NCBI GenBank assembly: GCA_004764695.1
Contig: SMSO01000031.1
Location: forward strand, 4,812,436-4,876,435
Direction: 5' to 3'
DNA: 64,000 nucleotides
From: Schizochytrium sp. TIO01
Taxonomy: Eukaryota; Protista; Bigyra: Labyrinthulomycetes
A program made the translations under genes and the position numbers. A model generated the notes under the pieces. It had not been told where the DNA came from and searched no databases. It was given only the letters and a program-made list of their open reading frames with translations. Positions 4,580 through 23,930 of the stretch are shown piece by piece (the first letter of the stretch is position 1; every line of letters begins with the position of its first letter).

Positions 4580-4643
4580 CACTCCAACGATACAGACGCG
4601 AATGCTCACGTCTTCTCCAAAGTCCAGGATCTTCGAAACGGTT

Positions 4644-4675: not shown

Positions 4676-6228
4676 AATAGAAAAATGATATTTTTCTATT
4701 GTCTAACGGTGTCTACTATTGCTACTACCAATGCACACCGATGTAAATTATTTTCTTTAAAAGACAACATGACCATTTGATTGAGAATCAAGCCTGAAGG
4801 GGCGCAACTGGTGAATGCGAAGGTGTATAGTGGAGCTCAATAAATAGATAAATAAGTTTTCTACGGAAATGAGGAGGTACCTATAGAGGAACACTCTGAT
4901 ATAGAGAATGGAAGACTATGAGCCTCGTAGCTAATCCAATACGAACGCACACATGCTACGATTCTGTATCTTCATGAAAAAGAGTCTTGCCTAACTACAC
5001 ATGTCCTAGCTCAAGCTTGCTCATTGAAAAAATCAGCACTGAGATAAGAAGGGGCCTTGGATACTCATTTTTTCGTCATTGTCACTATAAGAACGTTGAT
5101 GACTGTTCAGAGAACTGATGAAAAACAGGGAAAAGGAAGAGTAAGAGCGAGGTTGCCAAGGAAGGACACAGGAAAGAGAGGAGAAATAAAAGAGGCTTCG
5201 CATAACAAAGTGGGAGGGGACAACGAATAATGCCGAACAAAATAAGACTGTACAAAGGGATGTGATGAAGAGTCTTTCGAGGATTTGCTCCTGCGCGCAG
5301 GCGGCAGTTAAAGGCTGCAAACGACTACCAGAACTTGTTAAAATAAAACCCGAAATGAGAAATGGGATATTGGCTAGCTTTGTGGCACGAGTTGTGATTT
5401 GGGTAAGCAGCTAACGGATTGAAAAACGATCTACAAACAATTCTACTCAATCAAACTTGAAATATCTTGGGCAAAGCGGGATGGCATTGTAAGCGTATGG
5501 AACGGAGGGGGGAAAGGGAACCTTGGAGGGTGTAGTTGGAACGTGGTAGTGCTGTTGACAGTTTGAAATGGATTTGATGATTGCATTCAAGGGTATGATC
5601 ACCAAACTCTTGAAGTCAGGTCAGGAGTGGAACCTTTGCTGAATCAAATCATTTTTTATTGTTCAAGGATGACGAAAGAAAAGATCCAGAACATGTCGCC
5701 CTAGAGCTATCATAAATTATCCATGACACAAAAAGTTTGAGCATACGTGAGCTTTAAAGTACGATCGGTGAAGCACATTACTCGGACTTCTTTCTACAGT
5801 AGAAACGCAGTGAGATAAATATAAATAATGTCTCCGTATCTCACACGTAAATTTAGAAGCGCACCCCAAACCAGAACACATTATTTCACCCGTTTCTTCC
5901 TCGATAGGGTTTCTGTTCTACCTTCATTTAATTTTTTGTTTCTGTTAAATTTGTTTGTTGCTTGCGTTAACCAGAAGCCTCCTTGATTGTGGTTTTGCTT
6001 TTCTTTATACATACACAAAAGAGGAGACTACTTCTCATGGATGGTTTAATTATCTGCCCCTTTTCGAAGCACTCCGACTTTGAAAGTGCGCAGGCATGCA
6101 AGCGTGACTCATGGCCCGCTAATGGGTCACGTGTATTAGGTAGTCAACGCTAAATAATGCGGACTTGCAGAGACTTTAGGGAGGGTAACTTCTTCCCATG
6201 CACGAGCGACACTCTAGAATGCAAGAGT

Positions 6229-7677
6229 TTAGATGAGAGTAGCATTAGGGTGGAAGTGAGGAGGGAAGTCAGTGTTCATGAAGCTAATGTTAAGATCCAT
6301 CATGCGGTAGCAGGTATCGACACAGTCAAGGTCCTGTTGCGTAGAACTGGTCCATACACCAAGAGTATGGGACATGCAGAACTCGCGAAGCACGCTGCGC
6401 ACATTGTCTTCAAAGAGCATGGAGTCGTGGAGTTGAATGTATAGACCGTCGAGTGGGCCACCAAGAGTATGGGCTGCCTCGAGATACCCACGCATAGCAA
6501 CAAGGGCCTTTTCGGAGTCAGCAAAGTCGAGCTCAAGCTCAACATCGTCATCCTCCTCACCATGTTCACGAGGGTTGCGCAGTAAAAGAAGCATCTTTGG
6601 CAGGGCTTCTTTCTCCATGGCAAGTTCTGCAGAGACGTGGGTCATCTTTTGGGAGAAAGCTGCCATGATGGAGAAATCAAAGCTCATCACCACAGAGATG
6701 GCTTCGAGGTACCAGGGGCGCTCCAAGAAGAGGCGAGCAAGGGCATCAGACACATTACTGGCGCCGGACTTCACCTCCACAACGAGTTTGGACTTGAGCG
6801 CACGAGCTTGTTCCACGACATCTTCAAAGAGAGCTATGCTCGATCCGTCAAGGAGTGCAATAGCACGCGCCTGCTCGAGCGTGAGTTCTGTGACGAGAGA
6901 CTTAACGGTGGCGTCTCCCACGTCACGAGCAAGGCGCTCAATGGTGCTATCGTGACATAGAATGAGGTGACCATCGCTCGTTACGGTAATGTCACACTCT
7001 GACATGTGGACACCCGCCCTTGCGGCCTCGCGGTATGCCTTGACGGTGTTCTCAATGGGTCTTTCCAGCCGGTCACCCACCGCATGGAAACCTCTGTGTG
7101 CCACAAGTTTTTGTAGGATTGGCATTTCCAGCCGACCTACTGTCTCCACAAGTTTCTCATACTCCTCGCTCACGTCAAACTCAGGTTCCATCATTCTCCC
7201 AAGCCTTTCGAGTCCTTCCGGCACCTTCTCCACCTGCTGCTGTTGCCTCTGGAGTAAGTCTACTGGAGCCCAGTCTTGCGGAAAGGCGACGGCTGCTTCT
7301 GCGAGGGCTTGTTGCGAAAACGGCCTCGCCGCTCCTCCTGGTGCAAACGCAGCTAGCGCCTGCACCTGCTGATGTCTTCGCAGTGCACTTGTCGAAGTCG
7401 AAGTTATGGTTTTGCTGGCCGCACTTTTGCTTTCGCTCTTCTTCGTCTCCATTTGAAAGTCGCTTTCAAAGCCGCTTTCGACACCACCCCTCGGAACTAC
7501 AGCGTCTACAGCCTTGCTAGCAAAATTCCTAGTAGTCATCGTACCAGTGGGAGGAAGGCGGGGGGTAGCGTGGAGAGAAAGCCTAAAACTTTGAAAACCC
7601 GCCGCCGCCGCCGCCAGGGAACGAGGCGCCTGCGAGAAAGGCCGTCTCTTGCTGCAGAAGAGCGTGGCGAGGACCAT
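6229..7677 (-). CDS. Glycerophosphodiester phosphodiesterase (GDPD family), probably mitochondrial
   Basis: GDPD motifs LVAHRG...PIENT...SECDITVTSDGHLILCHD...VEVKS, MSFD, LGVWT and MNTDFP are present. The track ORF (to 7929) begins at a non-ATG codon beside a repeat. The first ATG (7677) opens an Arg/Ser/Ala-rich, acid-free N-terminus (MVLATLFCSKRRPFSQAPRSLAAAAAGFQSFRLSLHATPR). Confidence 0.88.
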   Translation of the reverse strand: MVLATLFCSKRRPFSQAPRSLAAAAAGFQSFRLSLHATPRLPPTGTMTTRNFASKAVDAVVPRGGVESGFESDFQMETKKSESKSAASKTITSTSTSALRRHQQVQALAAFAPGGAARPFSQQALAEAAVAFPQDWAPVDLLQRQQQQVEKVPEGLERLGRMMEPEFDVSEEYEKLVETVGRLEMPILQKLVAHRGFHAVGDRLERPIENTVKAYREAARAGVHMSECDITVTSDGHLILCHDSTIERLARDVGDATVKSLVTELTLEQARAIALLDGSSIALFEDVVEQARALKSKLVVEVKSGASNVSDALARLFLERPWYLEAISVVMSFDFSIMAAFSQKMTHVSAELAMEKEALPKMLLLLRNPREHGEEDDDVELELDFADSEKALVAMRGYLEAAHTLGGPLDGLYIQLHDSMLFEDNVRSVLREFCMSHTLGVWTSSTQQDLDCVDTCYRMMDLNISFMNTDFPPHFHPNATLI

Positions 7678-7953
7678 TAGCAAGGGCCCGCTGGCTGTAC
7701 TGGCTTGTCGGCGGTCCTCCTGACTTGCCTCAAGGCGGCGAAGACGCAAGCGGCAGTTCTTGGCGGCTCTCGGCGGCTTCTGGCGCTCCGATTGGTTGCG
7801 AATGCGATGAATTTTGACTTTGAGTTGGCTTTCTCTTTTTTTCTTCTTTTCTTTTCTTTCGTCATCGTTCCAACTTCGAGTCAAATAACGGGTTGAAAGA
7901 AAAAAGGAAAAAGAAGTCAGTACGTACAAAGCAGAAAGCAGAAAGCAGAAAGG

Positions 7954-7954
<1 letters not shown>

Positions 7955-8014
<60 letters not shown>
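7955..8014. repeat. (GAAA)15 microsatellite
   Basis: Perfect tetranucleotide tandem read directly from the sequence. Confidence 0.95.
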
Positions 8015-8015
<1 letters not shown>

Positions 8016-8917
8016 TTTCTTTTCATTTATTCTCTCTTTGCTCGCTCGTTCTTTCAACGCAGGAGTTACGGAGCGCCGGCACTTGCCGAATTTTTGATCC
8101 CCGCAGCCCACCCTCAGTGCCTTGTTTTTGTCTCCCGCAGTCATCGCGCCTCGCCTCCTCTCCCTGCCCCTTGCTTCACAAGTTTTCAGACTGCCAGGAG
8201 AGTGAGACCGACTGACTGACTGTGGGGGAAAGAAATGTCTGTTGAGCCATTCATTCATTCATCCTCCTCCTTCCTCTCCTCTCTTCTCTTCTCTCTTTCC
8301 CTCACTCACTATGCTTTTATAGGGGGGTCTGTCTGTCCATCTGTGTATCTGTTTGTGTGTATATAATATATATATATATCCGCTGAAGATGGATCATCGC
8401 CTCCTGCTCGAAAGGCCGCCCTCTGCGGCGACTTTCGAGCCGGCAGCCATCGGAAACGAGGCGCCCAAATCCCTCTTCGCGAGGCCTTCTCTCTCCAGTC
8501 TGTCCATTCGATCCTCGCGCTCTCTTGCTCTTCCCTGCATCGGCCGCGGCGCTCTGTCTGAGTTTTCCAAAGCTGTCCTTCCTCACTTCTCTATTGTGGT
8601 TACCATTAATGAAAACATTTTATTTATTTATTTATTTATAATTAAGTAAATAAATTAGCTATCATGATGGTTGATTGAGTTGAGATCGAACATCACTGCA
8701 ATCTGCGAACGTATTCTATAGATTAAAATGATAAAATCAAAGCAAAGGAAAAACATATATTCAGGAAAGAAGGAACCAGGAAAGGGGGCGCTCGTTGGGC
8801 GACATTTTGTCAACTCCACGGACCGAGCGCTTTGAGATCTTTGCTGAAGATATTTATTTACTTATTTACTTATTTATTCATTTACCTGCGAGATTGTGGA
8901 TGGACACGAAAGAAACG

Positions 8918-8968
<51 letters not shown>
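8918..8968. repeat. (AATC)~12 microsatellite
   Basis: Read directly from the sequence. Confidence 0.95.
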
Positions 8969-8969
<1 letters not shown>

Positions 8970-10854
8970 GTCAATCAAACAGAAACCCGACTTCGAAGAA
9001 GATCATCGGTGCGGGTTTCTTTCGCTTTCGGGCCGATCCCTTCGCATTTATCTGCTGATGGGTCTGGAAAGGCGCTGCGTTTAAGGGCAGAGTCGGTCGG
9101 CTTGAGGCCCGTGATGCTAAGCGAAGGCCAACGTACGCTAAACAAATCCGCAAAGAAAGAAACAAAGACACAAAGGAAGAAAGAAAGATTCGTTTGGCTG
9201 GCCAAGATGCGGCCAAGATGCAAGCTTAAAAATTGGGAAATAGGTGGGTTTACGGTGGATGCACGAGAGGACGAATGACGAAAGAATGAAAGAATGCATA
9301 AAAACGAATTCGAAGAGAGTACGCGACGAGCCGTAGCCAAGGCCCCCCGTGGTTTTCGCCTTCTCCGCGCCTTTCTTAAAAGGCAGGCAAAACAAACCAA
9401 CTTAAGGCTCGTGAAAAGCCAAGTCCAGCTCCAAGTCCAAGTCCAGCCTTGGAACGGCGAGGAGAGAGAGACCGAATGCCAAGCGGAGCTCAGTTTACAG
9501 TAGCTCTGAGGAGAGCTCGCTCTTGGATCAAACTTGGGGCTGGCTTGCCTCCGAGTTTTCTTTTCTATCAAGTCAATACATCAATACATGAATCTATTTC
9601 TCTCGAGGTCCTCAACTGCTTTCAACTGCTTCGAACTAACTGTCAGCAATGTGAGCATAAAAAGCAGAGCCCTTTCGTATGTGCTCTATAGCTTTGCTTA
9701 GATTATGGCCAACGATGATTGATTAACTGAATGATTGATTGAAATGAATGTATGAATGAATGAATGATTGCTTGACTATGCCTGAAAGTTGATCTGGCCA
9801 GGCTCCCGAGAGACTTAAAATCGCTCAGGCAGAAAGAGCCCCATGTGTGTGAGCCGCCTCTTCGACTTTTAAGAAGTCTATTTGATGGAAGAAGAAGAAG
9901 AAGACCTCAGGTCAGTAATCAAACCAAGACCTCGAACCTGTGTTTTCGACGAATCGTTAGATCCATAAACTTCTTTCGTTTGTTGCTGCTGTTATTGTTG
10001 AACTTAACTCCTAAATTCTAAAGTGGCTTTCCAAAAAGAAGTTCTTACTTATTTTCAAATCAAAATATCAAAGATAGAAAAGAAAGCAAAGTTTGTGAAT
10101 GAAGTTTTCTCCCTCTGTCTCCTCTGTCCACATAACCTATGTACTAGCTAGTTGCAAAACAAATACAATGAACCTCCCCTGGGCGCGCGGCGTGACTGTG
10201 GGGAAACGGAAAGCAGTTTCCTCCAGTGATGTGAGGGCGCTAAATTTGCAAAGAGCAGGGCCGCTGTGGGGAGGGGCTGCACAAAGCAGCGCGCGCTAGG
10301 GCCCTGCCAGCATAAATGTTAGGGCTGATTTTAGGACATGTACTTTAATGGGTTTAAGACGCCCACCCTCGCGGGAGATCCTCCTTCCTCTTCGTCGCGC
10401 GGCATGAGATCAATTGCATTTTGTGTGATTATATTACCCTCATAATCGATGGATTTCCTGATTGGTCTTCGGCCTCTCTGAAAGCCGCGGCCGTCGAGTA
10501 CTCATGCACAACGAAACAGGCAAAGGATGGATGCCTGTGACCAAACGGAGGTTGGCTTCTTCTTTTCATCGCAATCCAAGCACGCACCTCAGACTTGGTC
10601 GCCTTGTCGAAGAGTTCATTGCCAAGAAAGTCCTCGCACTATCCGCTTGAATTGAAGCAGCACGTTTATTGGCCTGCTTGTTTTAGACTGAGCTGAGGGC
10701 GCCTCTTTCTTTCGTAGTTTGCATACTCATTATTACTTTTTATCATAGTAGTCTGTATGACAGAAATTGCTTTTTCAACCAATACATATTAATTATCATC
10801 ATGTGTGTATGGTGGCGATTTTAATCATTATTGTTGTTTTATAAATATAAAATA

Positions 10855-13572: not shown

Positions 13573-14876
13573 TCGCCGGCGCCTCCACCTTGTGCGCAAA
13601 CCCGAAGAGGTCCTTGGCGCCAGCGCCGCGGTCTGCGGTGCGTGCAGAAGGGACCAAACACGATCTGCTTGCACGAGCTGTGCAGCCTCCGCTCGATTCA
13701 AATCGAAGATATGGCACTGTCAACGTTCATTCTTCGCCGCCGCAAAGTTCGAAATGAGTCAACGAATTAGGCGGAAAAGGCAGTTCTAAAGACATAGATG
13801 TATATATATGTATATAAATATAAATATATTTATGATTTATGATTTATGATAAATAAATAAATATATATATATATATTTATATATGTATTCATAAAGAGAG
13901 AGAGTGTGCTCGCCAGACCAGGGAAATTTTGGGACTAAATTCCGCCCAGGAGAGGGGACAGAACCCAACTGGCGGGGGGGGGGGGGGGTGGCGTAGAACA
14001 GTCTGCGCGACGGTGGGTGCGGGAAAATAAGGCCCGCAGTGGGCCCCACAACTGGATGACTCCCACACCACCCCACTAGGCACTCTTCTGCAGATGCGAG
14101 AGAAGAAGGGAACTCGGGATAGCAGGGCAGGTCGGGCTGTGGAGGGAAATTATCACGAGGGGACTCCTGGCAGGTGGGCCTAGCTAGCTGCCGTCATTCA
14201 TTGAAAGTGAAGAAGGCATGCAGAGAGCAAGCAGGTCTCCCTCCCTCACTCCGCAAAGCGGCCAAGGCAACTCTTTCTCTGCATATATCCATACACCTCT
14301 TATTGCTAGAAAGACAGAAAAAAGAAGAAACCTCGCGACGTTTTCCTTTATGGATTAGTCTATTTCTGGTTAGCGTAGTTAGAGTAATAAGTACGTCTTA
14401 CAGTCTTCATTGAGAACACTACAAGTGAGAGGAAAGGAGTCCCGTATAAAGGCCGCGACCCTTATACAGGTCACGACCCTTACAAGGGACATATAAGTAG
14501 TCTCTTAATCCAAAAAAATCTGAGCTCTTTTATTATTTTTTCAATAAAAAGCAGAATGAGCACAGCGAAAGCAAAGCGACAAACTGTGCGCTTTTCACGC
14601 GCTTTCTGCGGTGGCACTCATTTGTGCTGGCAAGGTATTCTGACGGAGATCGAAACTGACTCAAGGTTGTTGAACCGGTATCGGTCGTACTCTCAAACTC
14701 CTTCTAGTTGAGCCCAATCTAGAGCCGTCGCTTAATCTTGATTGCTTTGCTGGGGTCGGCCAGTTTCTGGACGCGGCGCTCGCTTGTGAGCTCAACGAAG
14801 ACCAAAAGATATTCCAGCATTATCGTCATTCCAAGTTGCTGACGCTCGATACAGAACTTGACCCGGTCTTTGTACA

Positions 14877-15746
14877 ATGACTTCTTTTGCAGCAAGTGAC
14901 ACGGCGTACAGAAATCGAGAAATTGAGACAACAGAATGGGAGGATGTCCTTGTGAAACACGGAATTATTCAAGAGCGGGATGAAATCAAGCTGCAGCGCG
15001 CACTTCGTGAAGAAGCTGCCAAACGGACAGAAAAGGCTGTGGATCCTGATGAAGAACTTCTTACAAAGACCTTAGAGGAACTCGATGTTCTGGAGGATGA
15101 TATTGAGGAGAACACGCTGGAGAAAATCCGGCAACAGCGCTTGCGTGAACTCAAAGCTGAGGCTGCTAAACAACGGTTTGGAGATGTTTATCCTCTTTCT
15201 CGTGCAGACTTCATTAGAGATGTTACTGAAGCTAGTCGCGAGTACTGGGTGGTGGTTGAAATGTTCAAGGACTCGATTGAGGAGTCTGTGAAATGTTCCC
15301 AGATGGTTCGGGAACTTGCATCGCGGCAGCGAGCGGTCAAGTTTGTGCGCATTTTGTCCACCAACTGCATTGAACGCTGGCCTGATGACAGTGTACCTAC
15401 TCTCTTTCTGTACCATGATGGCGTGATGCAAAAGCAGCTGACTGGGTTAGACTTTTGCGGCGGCATTGAACGTTCTACTGTGGACACAATGGAGCATGCG
15501 CTCGCGTTGTATGGACTGTTTGAGAAATTAACAGATGAGAACCTGGAGGCAGGTGCTAGGGCTCGCAGAGATGAGGCAGCAGAGGTCGCCCGGGAGAAAG
15601 AGGAGGAATTTGATGATGATGTTCGTGCCAACGTCAAAGCTGTGGCAGAAGCTGCCTCCGTTGGGAACAAAGTTTCCAAGGTGCCTGAGGCGCGGCGAAC
15701 TTCGCGACTTGCAAACCTTGATGACGATGACGACGATGACTGGTAA
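14877..15746 (+). CDS. Phosducin-like protein, PhLP2 subgroup (PDCL3/Plp2-like CCT co-chaperone)
   Basis: N-terminal TEWEDVLVKHGII motif, acidic helix LEELDVLEDD...LEKIRQQRLRELK, thioredoxin-like domain FGDVYPLSRADFIRDVTEAS...VKFVRILSTNCIERWPDDSVPTLFLY, and an acidic C-terminal tail. Confidence 0.9.
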   Translation: MTSFAASDTAYRNREIETTEWEDVLVKHGIIQERDEIKLQRALREEAAKRTEKAVDPDEELLTKTLEELDVLEDDIEENTLEKIRQQRLRELKAEAAKQRFGDVYPLSRADFIRDVTEASREYWVVVEMFKDSIEESVKCSQMVRELASRQRAVKFVRILSTNCIERWPDDSVPTLFLYHDGVMQKQLTGLDFCGGIERSTVDTMEHALALYGLFEKLTDENLEAGARARRDEAAEVAREKEEEFDDDVRANVKAVAEAASVGNKVSKVPEARRTSRLANLDDDDDDDW

Positions 15747-16535
15747 ACGAAGCTAAGCCTTGCCTTCGAAGCTAACGCTCTTACCCAAACTTACCTTGCA
15801 CTGCAATCATATACTTGGTACGGCGACTGAGCAAACTAGAACGCCAAAGGGTCTTCATGCCACCCAAGAAAGAATTGAAGCAAGATGCTTGAATTGCCAA
15901 ACGAATACTTTTATTATTTTATTCTATCCGAATGGCTCTTTCTCCACTGCAACATATGATTTGAAAGTAGCAAAATAGATACGAGTTGTGATGAGTAGGT
16001 AAAATACTATTCCTAGTGCTTCACTTCGCCCTATCTCGCGCGCAACAAACATTAACTTAGATCTAATGCTTGGGCGCTAATTTAATGTCTAGTAATAATT
16101 GTTTCAAATTCTTTTGTTTCAAGAAGAAACTATTCAATATATCAAATGAGAGGGAATCTCTTTCAATCGCAGCAATACGAACGTTCTTCTTATTCACTGG
16201 ATATCCATTCGACTTATTCAACTTAGCTGTCAAACGAAATAAAATTTCTTGCTCCGAAAACAAAATGAGGTAATGAGCTACAGAACGAAACGTAAAACTT
16301 TTCTTTCTTAAACAGTCTAAAGAGGTAAATCTATTAATTCATATGTGGAGAGCTACGTCTATCTTTCTACCCGTTAACGAGTAGACTGTTTCTCCCAACA
16401 GGTCGCGCTAACAATATCTTCTGTATATAAAACCTAGATCCTGTCAAAGAAGCAGAGGAGAAAGATGTTTCTTATAAGAAAGCTGGCAGACGACAGCTTT
16501 CAACTATTGCATTCACGGAATGACCCGTATAATGT

Positions 16536-17609
16536 TTAGCTCATGGCCATCACCTCCGCGAGGGTCGCACCATCCTTGAGCAAATTAGCACCAGCCCTGA
16601 GGATTGGTAAAGCCAAGGCTGCTCCACTGGCTTCGCCCAAGTGAAGGCTGAGGTCCAATACAGGGATTACAGTGGCTCCGGCAATAGATTGCACTTCCTC
16701 AAGCATAAATTTCTGGCCAGGCTCTGATGATCGTGTGGCGAAGATAAGGTGGCTAGCCACTCGAGGATCATGGCGAACAGCAACAAGGGCAGCAGAACTA
16801 GAAATGATACCATCCACCAAGAGTGCAATTTCCCGCTCAGGGCCCTGCAGATATGCCCCAGTCATTGCAGCAATTTCCAAACCACCCAGGTCCTGAAGTA
16901 CACCAAGAGCATCTTCAGGAGAAGATCCTCCTCTGGCCAGAGCCTTGGCAATAACCTTGGACTTGTTCTGCATACCCTTCTCATCTAGACCAGTGCCAGG
17001 TCCGACAAGTCTGGTGGGGTCCTCGAAACCGAGCAGCCGAGAGGCAATTGCACTAGCGGGAGTAGTGTTACCGATGCCCATCTCTCCAATGGCAAAGATT
17101 CGTGTGCCATCTTCTTCGATGGCTCGGTCCACTGCGTCTCTTCCGACCTGGAGAGCTGCCTTCATTTGCTCTGCTGACATGGCGGGCTGTACAGCCAGGT
17201 TGTCTGTGCCTTCGCAAACACGATCATTGAAGAAGCGAACAATCTCGTCATGCGGGGTGTCCTCAAGAGAGTATTCGTTTGCGACACCGACATCAATGAG
17301 GTCCACAGTCGCTCCATTGGACTTGGAGAAGCTTGTCGCACAAGATTTGCCAGCGTACATAGTCTTGAGCATTGAAATCGTCACGGCTTGCGGAAATGGC
17401 GACACGCCTTCGTCTCTGGCCACACCATGGTCGCCAGCAAAAATCAAGACTTTCGGACTCTCCAAAATTGGAGGATAGCTCGCCTGAGCTCTACACAGCT
17501 GCACTACAAGGTCCTCAAGTAGGCCGAGGCTACCAACGGGTTTTGCCAAAGAGTCTAAACGAGCACGGGCGTCCGCAGCTGCCTTAGTTTGCTCAGGAGT
17601 CTCAGCCAT
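16536..17609 (-). CDS. cobT: Nicotinate-nucleotide--dimethylbenzimidazole phosphoribosyltransferase (CobT)
   Basis: 357 aa, one uninterrupted ORF. CobT motifs: LAKPVGSLGLLEDL, FAGDHGV, DVGV, GEMGIGNTT, GPGTG, GGLEIAAMTGAYL, LVDG, SSEPG and LDLSLHLGEASGAALALPIL (putative catalytic Glu326). Confidence 0.95.
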   Translation of the reverse strand: MAETPEQTKAAADARARLDSLAKPVGSLGLLEDLVVQLCRAQASYPPILESPKVLIFAGDHGVARDEGVSPFPQAVTISMLKTMYAGKSCATSFSKSNGATVDLIDVGVANEYSLEDTPHDEIVRFFNDRVCEGTDNLAVQPAMSAEQMKAALQVGRDAVDRAIEEDGTRIFAIGEMGIGNTTPASAIASRLLGFEDPTRLVGPGTGLDEKGMQNKSKVIAKALARGGSSPEDALGVLQDLGGLEIAAMTGAYLQGPEREIALLVDGIISSSAALVAVRHDPRVASHLIFATRSSEPGQKFMLEEVQSIAGATVIPVLDLSLHLGEASGAALALPILRAGANLLKDGATLAEVMAMS

Positions 17610-19520
17610 TGTTCTGTAAACGCGTGCTAAACTTCAATAGTTCCACCTTTATAGCTTTGCCAAAACCTTTCACGTACGCGCCGCCTCGCTCAAGCCGGGC
17701 AAGTTCGTCTTTGGCTAGCAGGATACGGTACTGATTGCTCGCGCAGGGGTGTAAGTATATTTGTGAAAAACTTCAGTAGCACGATGTGGTTCAGAGTTGG
17801 TAGCATTTGCAAACTCAACTAAACGTTCCTTTACAGGTCGGCGCATCAATATGCACGACCTTGAGAAGTGACCGCATCTATATGGATACAAATCATGGCA
17901 GAGATATGTGCATAGGAACACTTGCAAGCGCAAGTCCTTCGTAGATTGTAAGTGAATACTTGCGAAGAGTTTCTCGAGCAATGAATCAATGTATTTATCA
18001 GTTCAGAAAAACACACATATTGCCATGGTCGTAGTAGATAGGTAGGGATATATACAGTATACTATTTGTTGGTAGGGTAAATGCAATAACATGAAAATAA
18101 CTTAGGTAGTAGGAAGTATCTAATATTTGTAGACGCCAGGATCTTTGAGTTCCTGGATTCCCTTGTCGTCGTAATTTTCGCGAGTAAAGTACGCGAGCTG
18201 CCAGAGCCTTGCTCCCTGCACGGCTCTTCAGTCCCTACTATCCTTCATGAGTAATCTCAAAAGAGTGATCATAAGTCTTGCTATTTTGGGATGAGTGTGT
18301 ACAACAAAGAGGGCCAGGAAATGAAATCAGATCGAATGTGAAAAAACGAATGAAAAAATCAATCAATCTTAGGCAATGAAATACCACACATCGTTCATGT
18401 ATTTGACCTATCTCCTTTTATAAAAATCGTGGGAGCACGCGAAATTATGAGGCTTCATGTTTTCGGAGGAATGTGCAATCCCTGAGGGAGGTGCTGGTGA
18501 TGGTGCACAGATCCGGGAAAGAGCTCACAAAAACGCTACGACCGCAGAGGATCTTTTCTGTAAAGTATGGTTACATAAACCGGGGAGGAAGCAGAACTAG
18601 TAGTGGCAGAATAATTACAAATTGTTAGTTGGGCCACGATACCCAATCCCAATGGTCCACAGATAGTTCATCCCATGACAATCAATGGTACAGTCGAGTC
18701 GTACACTCGCTGCGACCAAAGAACTTAGCTTACAGTCCAACGTTCTGGAGACGACTAGGCTTTGGAAGACAGCTCTTGAGCTACTAGGCAGGAAGGCAAG
18801 AGTGGGCATGTGATGGAGAAAGAAATAAATGGTCTTGAACGAACCAACGAAACCATGCTTCTCTTGGAAGGGCACTGCAGTTTGCAATTGCCATTACGAT
18901 CTGCAGCTTGATTCCTACCAATAATTTCTCCTTTTGCTGGTATCTACACTATCTTGCTTTTAAGCGAAGTTATACCTATACCAATCAAGATTCAGATTTT
19001 GACAAAATTGAACTAAACCACGCGCCCCTCGCTGCGGTTTCTCCAGTCTCGACAGCTTGCACGCCGCCGCGACCATATCTAGCTTGAGGTAGCCCAATCA
19101 GTCCCATTTGTTTTCATTACGCCAGCGAAGCTGTTCTTGGGAAACCATTGCAATCGCACCCATTTATCACACTACAGGACACCAGAGAAGACGCAAGTCT
19201 CGAAGCCAATATCTGGTGCCGTCATCCTATAGGTTATGGCGAATAATTTGCGCACAAAAATGGCGTCTGCCTTGCAATGCGAATCCTTGCAAACCATTGA
19301 AATGGCTGGAAAAAGCAGTTTTGGGTAAAACTAAAGAAACCTAAGAATAACGAGTCCAAAATAAAGACCACTCACGCACTGCAGTCGACGCCACAGATGC
19401 CAGTAAACCCGAATTCGAGGAACTCTTTCTGCGACTGTAGGCTTGCTTCACTGCTTGCGAAGTTCTGCAAAGAGACTTGAAGTGAAGTGAAGGTCCTGAA
19501 GAAAAGCGAAGGCCAGCGCG
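17610..19520. promoter_or_regulatory. Shared divergent upstream region between cobT and cobS (~1.9 kb)
   Basis: The start codons point away from each other (cobT ATG at 17609 on -, cobS ATG at 19521 on +), and no credible ORF lies between them. Confidence 0.55.
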
Positions 19521-20690
19521 ATGGCACCCAACAATGCACTGATGAAGTCGAGTCTTGGCGAGGACAAGAAAAACCCGCCTGAGACCGACGAGGCCAACGA
19601 TGGTAGCTTGAACAACGATGGATCCTCGAGTGATGCTGCAGAATTATGCGGAGACGAATCGTCTGGACAAACCATGCGTCAACGCGATGGTATGATCACC
19701 ACAGACGAGGTCCAAGGCCGTGGTGACGGCGTGAATCCCAATACTGGTGAAGTGGAAGCCGAGTGGTTTAAGGAATTACGCAGAGCGCTCGTAGCCACCA
19801 TGTTTCTCACTAGACTCCCAATGCCAGAGTGGGTTGATCATAACCCACGGGATCTCGTGCCTGGCATGATGTACTTTCCTATCATTGGCTCAATCGTTGG
19901 CATCTGGTGTGGACTCTGGTATGAGGCTTTAGTGCAGGTGTGGAGCCCGCTGGTTGCGGCTTGTGCGTCCACGCTCGCTGGCGTGTGGGTAAGTGGATGC
20001 TTCCATGAGGATGGCCTCATGGATACCACGGATGCATTCGGCGGTGGCTGGACACGGGACCAGATCCTGCGTATCATGAAAGATTCTCGATGTGGTACAT
20101 ATGCTGTAGTTGTTATGAACTTGTTCATGCTCACTAAGACCAACTCGTTGGCCTATCTTGGTTCTGGGGAGAAGGGCATTCTCACCGTTCAACAAGCTCT
20201 CATCATTGCTCATTCGTGCTCGCGGTTAACTGCTGTCTGGCAAGTTAATCTTTTTGAATATGTTCATGATGAGGGCGACGACAAGGGTTTATTGTACAAT
20301 ACCTACGCTGGCTGTCTCCGCCTCGGTCTTTTGACTTGGTCTCGTGTGGCCATTGCCACGGCATATACCCTCGCACTCATTGTCATGCTCTTGCCTGTGA
20401 CAAAGGTTATTGCTGTTTGCGTAGTTGTAGCCATAATGACGGTCGCCTCGGGAGTGTATGCGACTTCGATTATTGGTGGCATTATTGGAGATTTCTGTGG
20501 TGCTGTCATCCTTCTCACTGAGGGCCTTGTATACCTTATTCTTGCTGCGGATCTGGACGCCATTCCTCTGGATGCTTGGAAACCTTGGTTGCGCCTTGTG
20601 TTGTTTTGTGGTATCCCAGCATACTTTATGCCTGGTGTCGCTGGTTTTCTCGCGCGTCAGACTAGTAAACAAGCATGCCACACTGATTAG
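19521..20690 (+). CDS. cobS: Adenosylcobinamide-GDP ribazoletransferase / cobalamin synthase (CobS), polytopic membrane protein
   Basis: 389 aa, one uninterrupted ORF. CobS motifs: FLTRLP, YFPIIGSIVG, SGCFHEDGLMDTTDAFGGG, LRIMKDSRCGTYAV and GGIIGDFCGA...E. It has several hydrophobic helices and an ~80-aa acidic N-terminal extension. Confidence 0.95.
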   Translation: MAPNNALMKSSLGEDKKNPPETDEANDGSLNNDGSSSDAAELCGDESSGQTMRQRDGMITTDEVQGRGDGVNPNTGEVEAEWFKELRRALVATMFLTRLPMPEWVDHNPRDLVPGMMYFPIIGSIVGIWCGLWYEALVQVWSPLVAACASTLAGVWVSGCFHEDGLMDTTDAFGGGWTRDQILRIMKDSRCGTYAVVVMNLFMLTKTNSLAYLGSGEKGILTVQQALIIAHSCSRLTAVWQVNLFEYVHDEGDDKGLLYNTYAGCLRLGLLTWSRVAIATAYTLALIVMLLPVTKVIAVCVVVAIMTVASGVYATSIIGGIIGDFCGAVILLTEGLVYLILAADLDAIPLDAWKPWLRLVLFCGIPAYFMPGVAGFLARQTSKQACHTD

Positions 20691-21182
20691 CAATCCTTCT
20701 TTTCTTTGGCGCATCTTGAAGAGAGCTCTTTGCTTCTGTTTCTTGAGCATATGTCACCTTTCCGTTCTTTCTCCTCATGTGTAAGCACTATTCATATATC
20801 ATTATTTTAAATATTTGTCAATGTTGCAGAAGCACATCACAATCACACCAGAAAGTACCATGATTTGTGTAGTCTCTCTAGTTTTAAAATCAAGATTAGA
20901 ATAATATGCTATAATGCTGGTTCTTGAAAAGATCAATCAGGTTGCGAGAGAATCCATAAATAAACGAGACATGGACACCTAGTGTGCCATGTTTCTCTTA
21001 AAGCCATATGGCGATTGCTATTATTTTCCTGCTTGTAACCCAACGTGTGAATTCTATGGCACTTGTTTTTTTTTTTTGGGGGGGGGGGTTGTATTTAATA
21101 TCACTTTCACAGCACGCCCCATCTTCATAATGGCTATGCCAAACACTAGTATTTATCTTCGCCAAGTATCCTGACTACGTAT

Positions 21183-23050
21183 TTATCTGCTGCGCGAATA
21201 AACACAATTACCCTCTCGAAGGCGAGCTGTAGAGCGAATTGCTAGAAATGTTCGAACACGAGTTTGAATTACGAGTGCGGCAAGGTTTTCTCTTGGTAGT
21301 ACACTGCGGAGGAAGTTGACCCATGTATCTGCTTGGGATCTAGAATCAGTAGCAAAGTATTTTGTATCATGAAAGTCATCAATTGTGCGAATAAAAAATT
21401 CACACCATTCAGTTGGCGAATCATTACCAGAGCGGATTCTTACATCGAGCAGTTTATTGAAAGGGATAAATTGCTTTGCTTGGGATCCTGGGGCTGGGTC
21501 TGAGTCCCGCCAATAGGCTAAACCTCCAAGTTCTCTGCTTGCTTCTACCAGGCGTGGTTTATACGCGAGTTTTACACGAACCTTACTCATAGCTAGACCA
21601 GTAATTAGTGATAACGGGCTTTTACTTACTTGCATCCGCAAAACTGCCCTCAACGCAGTTTTATCTGACAGAACAGGTCGAAAATTCGGCAGACTTTCCT
21701 CGTATAATGCTTGGAGATCGGCGGAAGAAGTCATCTCGCTTAGAACCCGAGTGAGTTGCGAACCCGAAGAGTGACGATCAGCATTCCCCTTGCTGCTACT
21801 GCCTGTACTGAGCGTACTACTACTGAATTTTACCAAACGACGAACACGATTAAAAGATTTGTGTCTGGATAGCCTAGACGACGGGGATACTGGACTTAAG
21901 GGTGGAGAAGGAGACGAAACACTGGTCGATGATTCGTGTTGAAGCAACGATAATTCGGTGGCGGCTCTTTGCAAACGAATCTGCATTTCACCTCTTGGTC
22001 CTAACACAAGACGGTGTGCTTGTTCGCGCCGAACTCGTGCACGGGCAGCAACTTGACGACCTGCAAAACCTCGCCAAACTGCCTGAATGGTTGCTGCCGG
22101 AAGAACCTTGTGTTGAAGTGCCAAGATGTTTATAGTACTGACTTGATGGCGCCCCCCATCCAGGGAAACAAACAGAAAGCTTATTCTTCTAATCTTTTCT
22201 TGGTTAGGTTGAGCTTCATGGTATATATCTACACGCATATGCTCTCGATAAGTTTTCTGTACGCGGATACTAACAATAGAACTTGACAGTAAATAGGTAA
22301 AGAGACTTTGGGCCGATGCATTACTCCAAACAGAAAGTGCTGCAATATTTTGGTTTACGCTCATGTACTTTGTACTCCATTTGCGGGATCCCCAGCGCCT
22401 GCCTGGATCTAGCATACGGACTTGCACGGTTTTAGAGAGCGTCATTCGCATGATATTTTCTATAACAAACGGTTCTTGTGGCCACTTCAGAAGTACATGC
22501 ACCATGCTAGCACAGTTGAGCCCCCCGTGCATGGCCACATCAAGAGCTTGCTGTTGCCGCACAGTCTTCATTGTCGGGTTTGCGCCATGACTGAGAAGAA
22601 ATTGAACGAGGCTAATATTTTGCCCTCGACATGCCCAGTGCAGCGCTGAGTAGCCCATTGCTCGGTCCGTAGCATTAATTTGAGCACCATAATCCAAAAG
22701 GACCCGGACCACTTGAGTTTGTGCAATGTGGTCCGCATTTGGTAAAGCACATGCCAAGTGCAAGAGTGAAAACCCATTAGTGACGTCAGTGTCAGCGAGA
22801 CTCTGGCCTGACCTGCCTCCATGACCTACTTCGTCACTGCAGGTTCCACCAGGCCTCTCCACCTCGGCCAGAATTTTCTGAAGTTCCTCATAATCGCAGC
22901 AAGCCACCGCCACCTCAGCAGCTTTTCGTGAGGCCAGTGCATGTGGCGTGGGCCATCGCTCGCCTCTGCAGTCTGCTGACGATGGTAGTCTCAAACTTTG
23001 CTCGCTCTTCACAAAGTCAGCAACATGCCTAGCAATGGCTAAAGCCTTCC
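21183..23050 (-). CDS. Ankyrin-repeat protein with PH-like domains and IQ calmodulin-binding motifs (5' end unresolved)
   Basis: Ankyrin repeats (NGFSLLHLAC...VVRVLLDYGAQIN; GYSALHWACRGQNISLVQFLLSHGANP), IQ motifs (AATIQAVWRGFAGRQ; AALVIQTRVRTFLAIR) and a PH-like C-terminal helix (KYFATDSRSQADTWVNFLRS). The track start at 23012 is GTG, and the frame has no ATG before the upstream stop at 23067-23069. An upstream exon is likely; a candidate acceptor is ...ACTAG|G at ~23051. Confidence 0.78.
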
Positions 23051-23930
23051 TAGTAGTTAACCGGAACTATTCTGCTATCTCATCCTTTCATGAGCTTTGG
23101 CGACAAACACTTCAGCAATTGGCTTAAGGGAAGAAGTATTTGGCTGTGTTTGGTATGTAAAGCGCGCAGACAGATTCGTTTGCAGGACCTTTCGAATGCT
23201 GCTCATGAGAGGTACTGATCTGGAGTGAATCTGGTTCATTGTAAAGATGGGTAGCTAAGGAGATTTTGCACAGAACACTTGGTCTTTGTGTCATTGCTGT
23301 TGCGGGGATCTGAAAAGGGGAGAGTTGACTCAGAGATGATTTGGTTGACATCTTTAAGACCTTATGAGTCATTTTCCTTTGCGCAAAGGATGAATCGTTC
23401 TAATTTTACTCAAAGAGGGTTCAAGAGATACGGTCTCGAAGCCAGTTAGTCTGGTTCCCTGCATGGTGCAAAAGTAAATTAACTCTGGCTATGGCTTCCC
23501 AAAGGAGATCAATGTAATAGAAAGGAACTGTTATAAATGCAAACAAGACAGGTGATTGAACAAAACTGGACCATTCTCTGGATGCCGCATCGACCAATAT
23601 TTCTTAAAACACAGCGAACAGTCGAAATAGATGATTCATTAACGATTAAGTAAGAACAAAATTCAAAGAATCTAAATCTTTTTAAAAAAAGATGACAAAA
23701 GTCAAAGGATGACGATGCGTAAGGGTCATGGGGTCAGCATGATCAAAATTAGGGGGGGGGGGGGGGTCGTAAAGGGCGTTTCTACATGCTTTGCTTCAAA
23801 CACAAGCAAGCGAGGAAGGCATGAGCTTTAAGAACAACAGTGGAGCTAAATTTGTAACGCGTAATTTTCCAAATCAAAATAATGTGCAACAAATTCAAAT
23901 AAAGGACATTGAATCTATAATGGATACCTT

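What the first reader, a model, noticed from the sequence alone, without database searches (positions are those of the whole stretch)
16536..20690. Head-to-head cobT-cobS pair in a eukaryotic chromosome: candidate minimal vitamin B12 salvage/remodelling gene cluster
Seen: intact cobT (-) and cobS (+) transcribed divergently from a shared 1.9-kb region. They sit between eukaryotic genes (PhLP2, ankyrin/PH/IQ) and eukaryote-style microsatellites, which argues against bacterial contamination. Established: eukaryotes do not make the corrin ring de novo. CobT makes alpha-ribazole-5'-phosphate from DMB and CobS attaches it to the corrinoid, which are consecutive steps of nucleotide-loop assembly. 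A few algae remodel pseudocobalamin to cobalamin when given DMB, and from my recollection some bacterial CobS enzymes can exchange the lower ligand directly. Inference: this is a physically clustered, probably co-regulated two-gene module, possibly acquired horizontally from bacteria, that lets the protist turn scavenged pseudo-B12 or cobinamide into usable B12. The clustering, rather than the mere presence of the genes, is the unusual part.
Basis: partly seen in the sequence, partly recalled or inferred. Interest (0 to 1): 0.88.

Follow-up and report, generated by a model that had tools for sequence, protein, structure and literature searches.

The report
Linked cobT–cobS B12-remodelling genes, thraustochytrid
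A marine protist that cannot live without vitamin B12 keeps the two genes that attach the vitamin's lower ligand side by side on a chromosome; the genes were already reported for this species, but their linkage, and outright fusion in other eukaryotes, seems not to have been described.

Summary
An intact, intronless cobT (16536-17609, minus strand) and cobS (19521-20690, plus strand) are transcribed divergently across a 1,911-bp spacer. They lie 4.8 Mb into a chromosome-scale contig of a 64-Mb thraustochytrid genome, Aurantiochytrium limacinum or a very close relative, between ordinary eukaryotic genes.

The presence of the genes is not new. Helliwell et al. 2016 (Data S2A) already list this species as COBT+, COBS+, METE-.

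The genome has METH and MCM. It has no METE, CobU/CobP, CbiB, CbiZ or BluB. I infer that the pair remodels pseudocobalamin-type cobamides using external DMB, and that it does not salvage cobinamide.

The linkage appears to be the new part, and it extends well beyond this locus:
- In Hondaea the two genes have consecutive accessions on one contig.
- A green-alga-like contig carries them tail to tail.
- About a quarter of the nearest 50 CobS cluster representatives are CobS-CobT or CobT-CobS fusion proteins. These include Sphaeroforma, Aphanomyces and probably diatoms.
- In Chlamydomonas the genes are unlinked.

CobS belongs to a single pan-eukaryotic clade, so this is not a recent operon transfer into thraustochytrids. 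The origin of CobT is unresolved. Co-regulation could not be tested.

This is a known system with a modestly novel comparative-genomic twist.

The parts
16536..17609 (-). cobT/COBT: nicotinate-nucleotide:dimethylbenzimidazole phosphoribosyltransferase, 357 aa, a single exon
   Evidence: ORF. PF02277 scores 346.3 bits and TIGR03160 scores 337.1 bits, above the 319.3 cut-off. It aligns over residues 11-345 with the solved Thermus chain 1wx1, and the same search hit the Salmonella CobT structures. A 100% identical peptide exists in MMETSP and EukProt. It is the only copy in the genome.
17610..19520 (.). 1,911-bp spacer between the two divergent start codons; presumed 5' UTRs and promoters
   Evidence: Sequence read. 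GC is 0.445. ORFs of 45-90 aa give no Pfam match. There is no Rfam match, including the cobalamin riboswitch. The only repeat is a 23-nt two-copy direct repeat at 19135/19284, which may be chance. No transcript data could be obtained.
19521..20690 (+). cobS/COBS: eukaryote-type cobalamin-5'-phosphate synthase (adenosylcobinamide-GDP ribazoletransferase family), 389 aa, a single exon. About 85 aa at the N-terminus form a eukaryote-specific extension.
   Evidence: ORF. PF02654 scores 144.7 bits over positions 1-207 of 207. A 99% identical full-length MMETSP transcript ORF exists. The protein sits in a eukaryote-only CobS clade with 100/98 support. It shares the MAPNNAL start and the EVxxRGxG motif.
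14877..15746 (+). Flanking eukaryotic gene: phosducin-like protein
   Evidence: PF02114 Phosducin, 40.7 bits.
21183..23012 (-). Flanking eukaryotic gene: ankyrin-repeat and PH-domain protein
   Evidence: Ank_2 scores 69.8 bits. The PH domain scores 24.8 bits, just under Pfam's 25.1 cut-off.

Best explanation
This is the COBT-COBS lower-ligand module of a B12-auxotrophic thraustochytrid, Aurantiochytrium limacinum or a near relative.

Proposed mechanism. CobT would make alpha-ribazole-5'-phosphate from nicotinate mononucleotide and externally supplied DMB. The membrane enzyme CobS would join it to a corrinoid. A histidine phosphatase of the CobC type would remove the phosphate. The genome lacks CobU/CobP, CbiB, CbiZ and BluB. 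The likely job is therefore remodelling of imported cobamides that carry a poor lower ligand (pseudocobalamin, Factor A) into cobalamin for METH and MCM. This would work by a CobS-dependent exchange like the one described for Vibrio cholerae. It is not cobinamide salvage or de novo synthesis.

The linkage. The head-to-head adjacency is an inherited, conserved arrangement. It is one form of a wider tendency of eukaryotic COBS and COBT to stay linked or to fuse. That argues that the two enzymes work as an obligate pair.

Shown here: gene identity, intactness, chromosomal residence, transcription, pathway context, conserved linkage and fusions.
Inferred: substrates, the exchange mechanism, co-regulation, and any physical coupling of the two proteins.
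For: -
- Pathway context: METH and MCM are present. METE (14), CobU (10), CbiB (11), CbiZ (33) and BluB (34) gave no match. Two histidine phosphatases have alpha-ribazole phosphatase as their best NCBIfam model, but below its cut-off.
- Transcription: MMETSP peptides match CobT at 100% and CobS at 99%.
- Literature:
  - Algae with COBT and COBS remodel pseudocobalamin when given DMB, and this species is listed as COBT+, COBS+, METE- (PMC4850488).
  - A Chlamydomonas COBT knockout loses remodelling (bioRxiv 10.64898/2026.08.07.738727).
  - V. cholerae CobS has remodelling activity (PMC7733943).
- Linkage:
  - Hondaea CobS GBG29382.1 and CobT GBG29383.1 are consecutive on one 320-kb contig.
  - Locus L016 carries the genes tail to tail, and L017 carries an in-frame CobS-CobT ORF.
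  - Thirteen of roughly the nearest 50 CobS cluster representatives are two-domain fusions, in both orders. They include Sphaeroforma arctica and Aphanomyces astaci.
  - An ESM Atlas cluster of 103 two-domain proteins is 100% eukaryotic and mostly diatom. Its score of 0.84 makes it a lead only.
Against: - No experiment or expression profile from this organism was available.
- The CobC step is not securely identified.
- In Chlamydomonas the two genes lie on different chromosomes (Cre12 and Cre01). Linkage is therefore not required for function.
- The 2026 preprint could not obtain a COBS knockout with the expected phenotype and raises possible redundancy.
- A 1.9-kb spacer is long for a shared bidirectional promoter.
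- Genome-wide synteny between Aurantiochytrium and Hondaea is unknown. Their shared adjacency alone could be plain inheritance.
- An unrecognised guanylyltransferase of the CobY type was not excluded.
Confidence: 0.7

Rival explanations
1. Cobinamide salvage. The pair completes nucleotide-loop assembly on scavenged cobinamide, as E. coli does with CobUST plus CobC.
For: CobS family enzymes canonically use adenosylcobinamide-GDP (NCBIfam names). E. coli is a precedent for salvage without de novo synthesis (PMC7733943).
Against: No CobU/CobP kinase-guanylyltransferase and no CbiB were found in a chromosome-scale genome, while the control genomes were detected. Without adenosylcobinamide-GDP the canonical CobS reaction has no corrinoid substrate. 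A generic nucleotidyltransferase of the CobY type was not specifically excluded.
Confidence: 0.1
2. The adjacency has no functional meaning. The two genes are neighbours by descent, and Hondaea keeps the arrangement only because the genera share general synteny.
For: Chlamydomonas has the genes on different chromosomes. Orientation differs between lineages: divergent here, convergent in L016. The 1.9-kb spacer gives no sign of a shared control element.
Against: Independent fusions in both domain orders form separate, well supported clades. L017 is a direct in-frame fusion at the DNA level. A green-alga-like contig links the genes in yet another orientation. Chance adjacency of two named genes is about 1 in 7,500 per genome by my estimate.
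Confidence: 0.12
3. A recent transfer of a bacterial cobT-cobS operon into the thraustochytrid lineage, later split by an inversion.
For: In bacteria cobT sits directly upstream of cobS in most loci examined. 64 of 80 named genomes have cobS within 4 kb, and so do nearly all the metagenome loci. The thraustochytrid CobT is 49-52% identical to unnamed bacterial-type CobTs but only 34-39% identical to the other eukaryotic CobTs I compared, L016 at 34% and Sphaeroforma at 39%. In the best tree it groups with the bacterial-type CobTs, with 100/96 support.
Against: CobS nests deep inside a single eukaryotic clade (100/98, and 100% of bootstrap trees). It also carries the eukaryote-specific N-terminal module. 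It therefore did not arrive with a recent bacterial operon. Composition is fully host-like. No bacterial locus with both a close CobT and a close CobS was found.
Confidence: 0.05
4. Bacterial contamination or mis-assembly.
For: The only support is the bacterial flavour of the two families.
Against: The genes lie 4.8 Mb into a multi-megabase contig between eukaryotic genes. GC3 is host-like. Matching peptides occur in the MMETSP transcriptome. The same pair is found in the independently sequenced Hondaea genome.
Confidence: 0.01

Closest known systems
Eukaryotic algal COBT/COBS/COBC cobamide remodelling (Chlamydomonas reinhardtii, Pavlova/Diacronema lutheri; Helliwell et al. 2016; 2026 Chlamydomonas COBT knockout preprint)
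   Same: The two families are the same, and so is the gene set: no CbiZ and no CbiB. The organism has the same B12-dependent METH background. The window's CobS falls in the same eukaryotic clade as the CobS of Chlamydomonas incerta (a close relative of C. reinhardtii), Gonium and Diacronema. This species is already in their list of candidate remodellers.
   Different: The organism here is a non-photosynthetic thraustochytrid. The genes are immediate divergent neighbours, whereas in Chlamydomonas they lie on chromosomes 12 and 1. The thraustochytrid CobT is much closer to bacterial CobTs than the other eukaryotic CobT domains are. No physiology has been done here.
Vibrio cholerae CobS-dependent remodelling of pseudocobalamin (Ma, Tyrell & Beld 2020, as cited in PMC7733943)
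   Same: Remodelling proceeds without CbiZ and relies on CobS together with the lower-ligand activation enzymes. This is the only known route compatible with the gene set found here.
   Different: It is a bacterial enzyme without the eukaryotic N-terminal extension. Whether eukaryotic CobS performs the same exchange is untested. I did not read the primary paper, which is not in the held library.
Bacterial cobT-cobS (cobUST) operons
   Same: The same two consecutive enzymes are kept adjacent. The T-then-S order survives in the Sphaeroforma and Aphanomyces fusions.
   Different: In bacteria the genes are co-directional, abutting or overlapping, and usually accompanied by cobU and cobC. Here they are divergent monocistronic eukaryotic genes 1.9 kb apart, with no cobU anywhere in the genome.
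Diatom cobalamin-pathway genes of bacterial origin (Vancaester et al. 2020 preprint)
   Same: These are stramenopile genomes carrying late cobalamin-pathway genes that are interpreted as scavenging or repair functions.
   Different: Those horizontally transferred genes are CobN, CobA/O, CobQ, CbiB(+CbiZ), CobU and BluB. None of those I searched for was found here: CobU, CbiB, CbiZ and BluB gave no match, while CobN, CobA/O and CobQ were not searched. That paper treats CobT and CobS as known remodelling genes. In the passages I searched it does not mention their linkage or fusion.

Membership tests
CobT (nicotinate-nucleotide:DMB phosphoribosyltransferase; PF02277 / TIGR03160) | Full-length match above the curated equivalog cut-off | tested here: met
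   TIGR03160 scores 337.1 bits against a cut-off of 319.3. NF000996 scores 345.2 against 306. PF02277 scores 346.3 bits over profile positions 5-326 of 329.
CobT (nicotinate-nucleotide:DMB phosphoribosyltransferase; PF02277 / TIGR03160) | Conserved active-site motifs: GDHG, the G-E-M-G-I-G-N-T-T phosphate loop, and the catalytic Glu in the L-G-E-x-(S/T)-G-A motif | tested here: met
   All are visible in the alignment to the solved Thermus CobT 1wx1. In alignment A2 the defining residues are invariant: D60, H61, G175, E176, G178-G180 and G325-E326. The role of the Glu comes from my knowledge of the Salmonella structures, not from a tool result.
CobT (nicotinate-nucleotide:DMB phosphoribosyltransferase; PF02277 / TIGR03160) | Enzyme activity and base preference (DMB versus adenine) | not testable with these tools
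   This needs an enzyme assay. The pocket-signature note s1-828592 was not evaluated.
CobS (cobalamin-5'-phosphate synthase; PF02654) | Full-length Pfam domain above the gathering score | tested here: met
   144.7 bits against a cut-off of 23.2, covering profile positions 1-207 of 207.
CobS (cobalamin-5'-phosphate synthase; PF02654) | Bacterial or archaeal equivalog-level match (NCBIfam NF001277, TIGR00317) | tested here: not met
   The best is NF001277 at 174.5 bits against a cut-off of 273. TIGR00317 scores 84.9 against 110. This fits a divergent eukaryote-type subfamily. It is a member of the family but not of any bacterial equivalog.
Eukaryote-type COBS clade | Falls inside the eukaryote-only clade and carries its N-terminal module: an M-A-P-N start and the (S/T)xxEVxxRGxG motif | tested here: met
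   The clade of 37 sequences has 100/98 support and appears in 100% of bootstrap trees. The motifs are seen in alignment A1 and counted. The thraustochytrid proteins end ...ACHTD rather than with the usual terminal Cys.
Cobinamide salvage pathway (CobU/CobP or CobY, with CobS, CobT and CobC) | A kinase-guanylyltransferase that makes adenosylcobinamide-GDP | tested here: not met
   PF02283 gave no match in the whole genome, while 5 control genomes were detected. CobY-type enzymes were not searched specifically.
CbiZ/CbiB-type cobamide remodelling (Rhodobacter type) | CbiZ amidohydrolase and CbiB | tested here: not met
   PF01955 and PF03186 gave no match.
Eukaryotic functional gene cluster (linked genes of one pathway) | Adjacency conserved in a related genus | tested here: met
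   Hondaea fermentalgiana GBG29382.1 (CobS) and GBG29383.1 (CobT) are consecutive records on the same 320,354-bp contig.
Eukaryotic functional gene cluster (linked genes of one pathway) | Co-expression or shared regulation | not tested
The only evidence is that both mRNAs are present in MMETSP.

The most novel reading that the evidence does not exclude
COBS and COBT form an obligately coupled two-enzyme unit across eukaryotes. The coupling is kept by linkage in thraustochytrids and a green alga. It has been hard-wired by at least three separately placed fusion groups: S-T in diatom-like taxa, T-S in Sphaeroforma-like taxa, and T-S in Aphanomyces. In thraustochytrids the CobT half would additionally have been replaced in place by a more recent bacterial copy, sitting next to the old eukaryote-type CobS. 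That would be a eukaryotic example of xenologous gene displacement within a conserved gene pair.
Probability: 0.3. Interest if true: 0.6.

Novelty: new member of a known kind. Interest (0 to 1): 0.42.

Why it matters
Cobamide remodelling decides which microbial eukaryotes can use the pseudocobalamin that cyanobacteria release. It therefore affects B12 limitation in the sea.

The field has genetic proof only for COBT, in Chlamydomonas. It has openly questioned whether COBS is needed. The recurrent linkage and fusion of COBS with COBT in distant eukaryotes is independent comparative evidence that the two act together.

Aurantiochytrium is an industrial DHA producer, genetically tractable, heterotrophic and a B12 auxotroph. 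Its compact two-gene locus makes it a convenient system for testing this.

The result also extends candidate remodelling beyond algae, to osmotrophic and parasitic protists: thraustochytrids, an oomycete and an ichthyosporean.

The mere presence of the genes, however, is already in the literature.

Tried and rejected
I could not read the Hondaea locus or the contexts of the closest unnamed CobT and CobS relatives.
- The third homologous-protein search, with the Aphanomyces N-terminal domain, returned only the query itself.
- Complex prediction on CobT plus CobS gave no verdict, with a score of 0.00. This is not evidence either way.
- A quick CobT tree suggested two origins. An AU test against that quick tree then showed the constrained tree was actually better, which exposed a poor search. 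After a careful search the two-origin tree is best, but monophyly is still not rejected, with p-AU 0.298. I therefore dropped a firm claim that CobT was replaced by a bacterial copy.
- The shared-donor test found no fetched bacterial locus that combines a close CobT with a close CobS. Across 101 loci the two similarities are uncorrelated, with Spearman rho -0.16. The last cluster look-up gave no names for the nearest relatives.
- The Rfam scan of 14000-23500 found nothing, so no cobalamin riboswitch. Sigma-70 promoter and terminator scans of the spacer gave counts at or below the shuffle means, which is uninformative for a eukaryote.
- The taxid 87120 in a truncated MMETSP header resolved to an unrelated fungus. 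I rely instead on MMETSP0960 and on Helliwell's table for the species.
- The L016 CobT gene has introns. I used its exons separately and never joined them, and only the largest exon entered the tree.


Full report
**1. What is in the sequence**

Two intact ORFs sit at the reported coordinates. The first, at 16536-17609 on the minus strand, encodes 357 aa. It matches the CobT family over its full length. PF02277 scores 346 bits. The NCBIfam equivalog TIGR03160 scores 337.1 bits, above its 319.3 cut-off. The protein aligns end to end with solved CobT structures. The GDHGV, GEMGIGNTT and LGE(A)SGA motifs are retained.

The second ORF, at 19521-20690 on the plus strand, encodes 389 aa. It carries a complete CobS domain, PF02654 at 144.7 bits over positions 1-207 of 207. 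It does not reach any bacterial equivalog cut-off.

The two start codons face each other across 1,911 bp. The spacer's short ORFs have no Pfam match. It has no Rfam match, so no cobalamin riboswitch. Its only repeat is a weak two-copy one.

The flanking genes are a phosducin-like protein and an ankyrin/PH protein. Microsatellites lie nearby.

**2. Whose genome, and is it contamination?**

The window is G000:C30:4812436-4876435 in a 64.07-Mb assembly of 37 contigs. The methylmalonyl-CoA mutase gene lies at 8.65 Mb on the same contig. The pair is therefore deep inside a chromosome-scale sequence.

The closest named proteins come from the thraustochytrid Hondaea fermentalgiana, at 64-65% identity. 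The CobS is 99% identical, and the CobT 100% identical, to MMETSP transcriptome peptides (MMETSP0960). I take the organism to be Aurantiochytrium limacinum or a very near relative.

GC and GC3 of both genes (0.51-0.53 and 0.49-0.52) lie within the spread of neighbouring genes. Each gene is single-copy. Contamination and mis-assembly are excluded for practical purposes. Both genes are transcribed.

**3. Pathway context**

Whole-genome six-frame searches gave the following results.
- Present: a B12-dependent methionine synthase and methylmalonyl-CoA mutase.
- No match: METE, CobU/CobP, CbiB, CbiZ.
- BluB: only faint nitroreductase-like hits.
- CobC: two histidine phosphatases have alpha-ribazole phosphatase as their best NCBIfam model, at 102 and 92 bits. 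Both are well under the 162.9 cut-off. A CobC-like step is plausible but not identified.

The organism is thus a predicted B12 auxotroph. It holds only the two lower-ligand enzymes.

**4. What is already known**

Helliwell et al. 2016 (PMC4850488) showed that Chlamydomonas and Pavlova lutheri convert pseudocobalamin to cobalamin when given DMB. They found COBT, COBS and COBC but no CbiZ or CbiB in such algae. Their Data S2A explicitly lists [quoted passage not shown]. It also lists Thraustochytrium sp. and Schizochytrium aggregatum.

A 2026 preprint (10.64898/2026.08.07.738727) shows that knocking out Chlamydomonas COBT abolishes remodelling. It reports failure to obtain a COBS mutant and wonders whether COBS is essential.

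Vibrio cholerae CobS is cited as an enzyme with remodelling activity (PMC7733943).

The presence of the genes and their general role are therefore not new. In the papers I could search, the words "cluster" and "adjacent" do not occur in this context. Searches combining thraustochytrids with CobS, or CobT/CobS with "fused", found nothing relevant.

**5. The linkage is real and wider than this locus**

Five lines of evidence bear on it.

1. In Hondaea, CobS (GBG29382.1, FCC1311_056042) and CobT (GBG29383.1) are consecutive records on one 320,354-bp contig.
2. A scan of metagenome contigs with a eukaryote-type CobS alignment returned mostly bacterial loci. In nearly all of them cobT lies directly upstream of cobS on the same strand. 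The same holds for 64 of 80 named bacterial genomes within 4 kb.
3. Two loci from that scan are eukaryotic in character.
   - L016 is 10.9 kb with 55% GC. It has a geranylgeranyl-reductase-like gene and a CobS starting MAPNKRGG. Its CobS at 5251-6609 (+) and an intron-bearing CobT at about 6916-8460 (-) lie tail to tail, about 300 bp apart.
   - L017 has one uninterrupted ORF (1301-1756) that runs from the C-terminal part of CobS straight into the N-terminus of CobT. This is an in-frame fusion seen in DNA.
4. An exhaustive HMMER search of 1.84 billion cluster representatives with the window's CobS gave many long hits. Pfam shows 13 two-domain proteins among roughly the nearest 50.
   - Ten have the order CobS-CobT.
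   - Three have the order CobT-CobS.
   - Named ones are Sphaeroforma arctica SARC_07750 and Aphanomyces astaci H257_09447. The latter is predicted in nine isolates, and its CobT-like half is very divergent.
   - The S-T fusions start MAPNNAL or MAVNNAL like other eukaryotic CobS.
   - An ESM Atlas cluster of 103 such proteins is 100% eukaryotic and mostly diatom. Its score of 0.84 makes it a lead only.
5. As a counter-example, Chlamydomonas COBT (Cre12.g555500) and COBS (Cre01.g036950) are on different chromosomes.

Linkage is therefore frequent and takes several forms, but it is not obligatory.

**6. Origins**

A careful maximum-likelihood CobS tree places all 37 eukaryote-type CobS sequences in one clade. 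Support is 100/98, and the clade appears in 100% of bootstrap trees. Its sisters are a few unnamed short bacterial CobS.

The thraustochytrid CobS is nested well inside, with environmental sequences and Euglena (100/100). The S-T fusions form one clade. Sphaeroforma plus P0261 form another. Aphanomyces branches near the base.

The clade is also marked by a shared N-terminal extension that bacterial CobS lacks. CobS therefore did not reach thraustochytrids by a recent bacterial operon transfer.

CobT is less clear.
- The window's CobT is 49-52% identical to unnamed 340-aa bacterial-type CobTs. The named ones among the near hits are Alphaproteobacteria and Myxococcota MAGs.
- It is only 34-39% identical to the two other eukaryotic CobTs I compared directly, L016 at 34% and Sphaeroforma at 39%.
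- The careful tree puts window plus Hondaea with the bacterial-type group (100/96). This is apart from an 11-member clade of other eukaryotic CobTs. No bootstrap tree unites them.
- Yet the AU test does not reject a single eukaryotic CobT clade. The log-likelihood difference is 21.2 and p-AU is 0.298.
- Window, Hondaea and their nearest relative P0003 also share a short insertion just before the catalytic LGE motif. The S-T fusions and L016 have it too. The bacterial sequences shown, and the T-S fusions, lack it.

I leave this unresolved, at roughly even odds. Either there was one eukaryotic origin with a slowly evolving thraustochytrid CobT, or a more recent bacterial copy replaced it. No donor lineage could be named.

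**7. Most likely mechanism**

Given the gene set, the best-supported reading is lower-ligand remodelling. CobT would activate external DMB to alpha-ribazole-5'-phosphate. CobS, a polytopic membrane enzyme, would install it on an imported cobamide. An unidentified phosphatase would finish the product. The resulting cobalamin would serve METH and MCM.

The genome has no CobU/CobP and no CbiZ or CbiB. The corrinoid partner can therefore hardly be adenosylcobinamide-GDP made in house. A CobS-mediated exchange of the V. cholerae kind is the only described route that fits.

All of this paragraph is inference from homology and from work in other organisms. Nothing was measured here.

The fusions in both orders argue that the two enzymes act in close proximity, for example by handing alpha-ribazole phosphate to the membrane enzyme. 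That too is inference. The structure-based complex test gave no verdict.

**8. Verdict**

- Right: this is a real, expressed, minimal B12 lower-ligand module whose adjacency is conserved.
- Overstated: the novelty of the genes, which are published for this species.
- Doubtful: the cobinamide option, which lacks the needed enzymes.
- Not supported: acquisition of the pair together from one bacterium, which CobS contradicts.
- Untested: co-regulation.

The added value of this follow-up is that the head-to-head pair is one instance of a widespread COBS-COBT linkage and fusion pattern in eukaryotes. I did not find this pattern described. It bears directly on the open question of whether COBS is part of the eukaryotic remodelling pathway. 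Interest is moderate.

Synteny details in Hondaea and all read-level evidence are therefore missing.

Noticed in passing
window 19521-19780 (CobS residues 1-85); alignment A1; P0255, P0261: Eukaryotic CobS proteins share an N-terminal extension of about 85-100 aa that bacterial CobS lacks. It has a near-invariant start, M-A-P-N (MAPNNAL, MAPNRRG or MAPNKRGG), and a second motif, (S/T)xxEVxxRGxG. Most of these proteins end in a C-terminal Cys. Of 90 long eukaryote-type sequences, 53 start M[AS][PV]N, 60 have the RG motif and 51 end in Cys. T-S fusions keep the RG motif in the linker. The tail is acidic and polar, so it does not look like a signal or transit peptide. Its function is unknown.
   Followed up: partly
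P0205 (Aphanomyces astaci H257_09447), residues 1-300: The CobT-like half of the oomycete fusion is extremely divergent. PF02277 scores only 65 bits over 79 residues, and its branch length was about 10 in the tree. The CobS half is normal. The CobT half may be a degenerate or repurposed domain, or a gene-model problem. A homology search with it returned only the query itself.
   Followed up: partly
G000:C31:7535909-7536733 (locus L011): The single METH hit lies in an open frame of 2,867 aa. It is the likely main consumer of the cobalamin this locus would produce.
   Followed up: no
window 905-4609 (-): A 1,234-aa ORF upstream of the finding. Another first-stage note (s1-828359) reads it as an S9 peptidase with an inserted NUDT9-type ADP-ribose pyrophosphatase. 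I did not examine it.
   Followed up: no
L043 (JAESFL010000018.1, 317-kb contig), about 8625-10798: Among the bacterial-type loci this one has the CobS most similar to the window's, at 37.5% identity and 155 bits. Its CobT and CobS lie in overlapping long open frames, which could be a bacterial T-S fusion or tight overlap. The organism was not identified.
   Followed up: no
window 26000-64000: GC content drops from about 0.45-0.52 in the first 26 kb to about 0.34-0.44 in the rest of the window. No ORF of 200 aa or more lies beyond 25986. The right-hand 38 kb is compositionally distinct and gene-poor by this crude measure.
   Followed up: no
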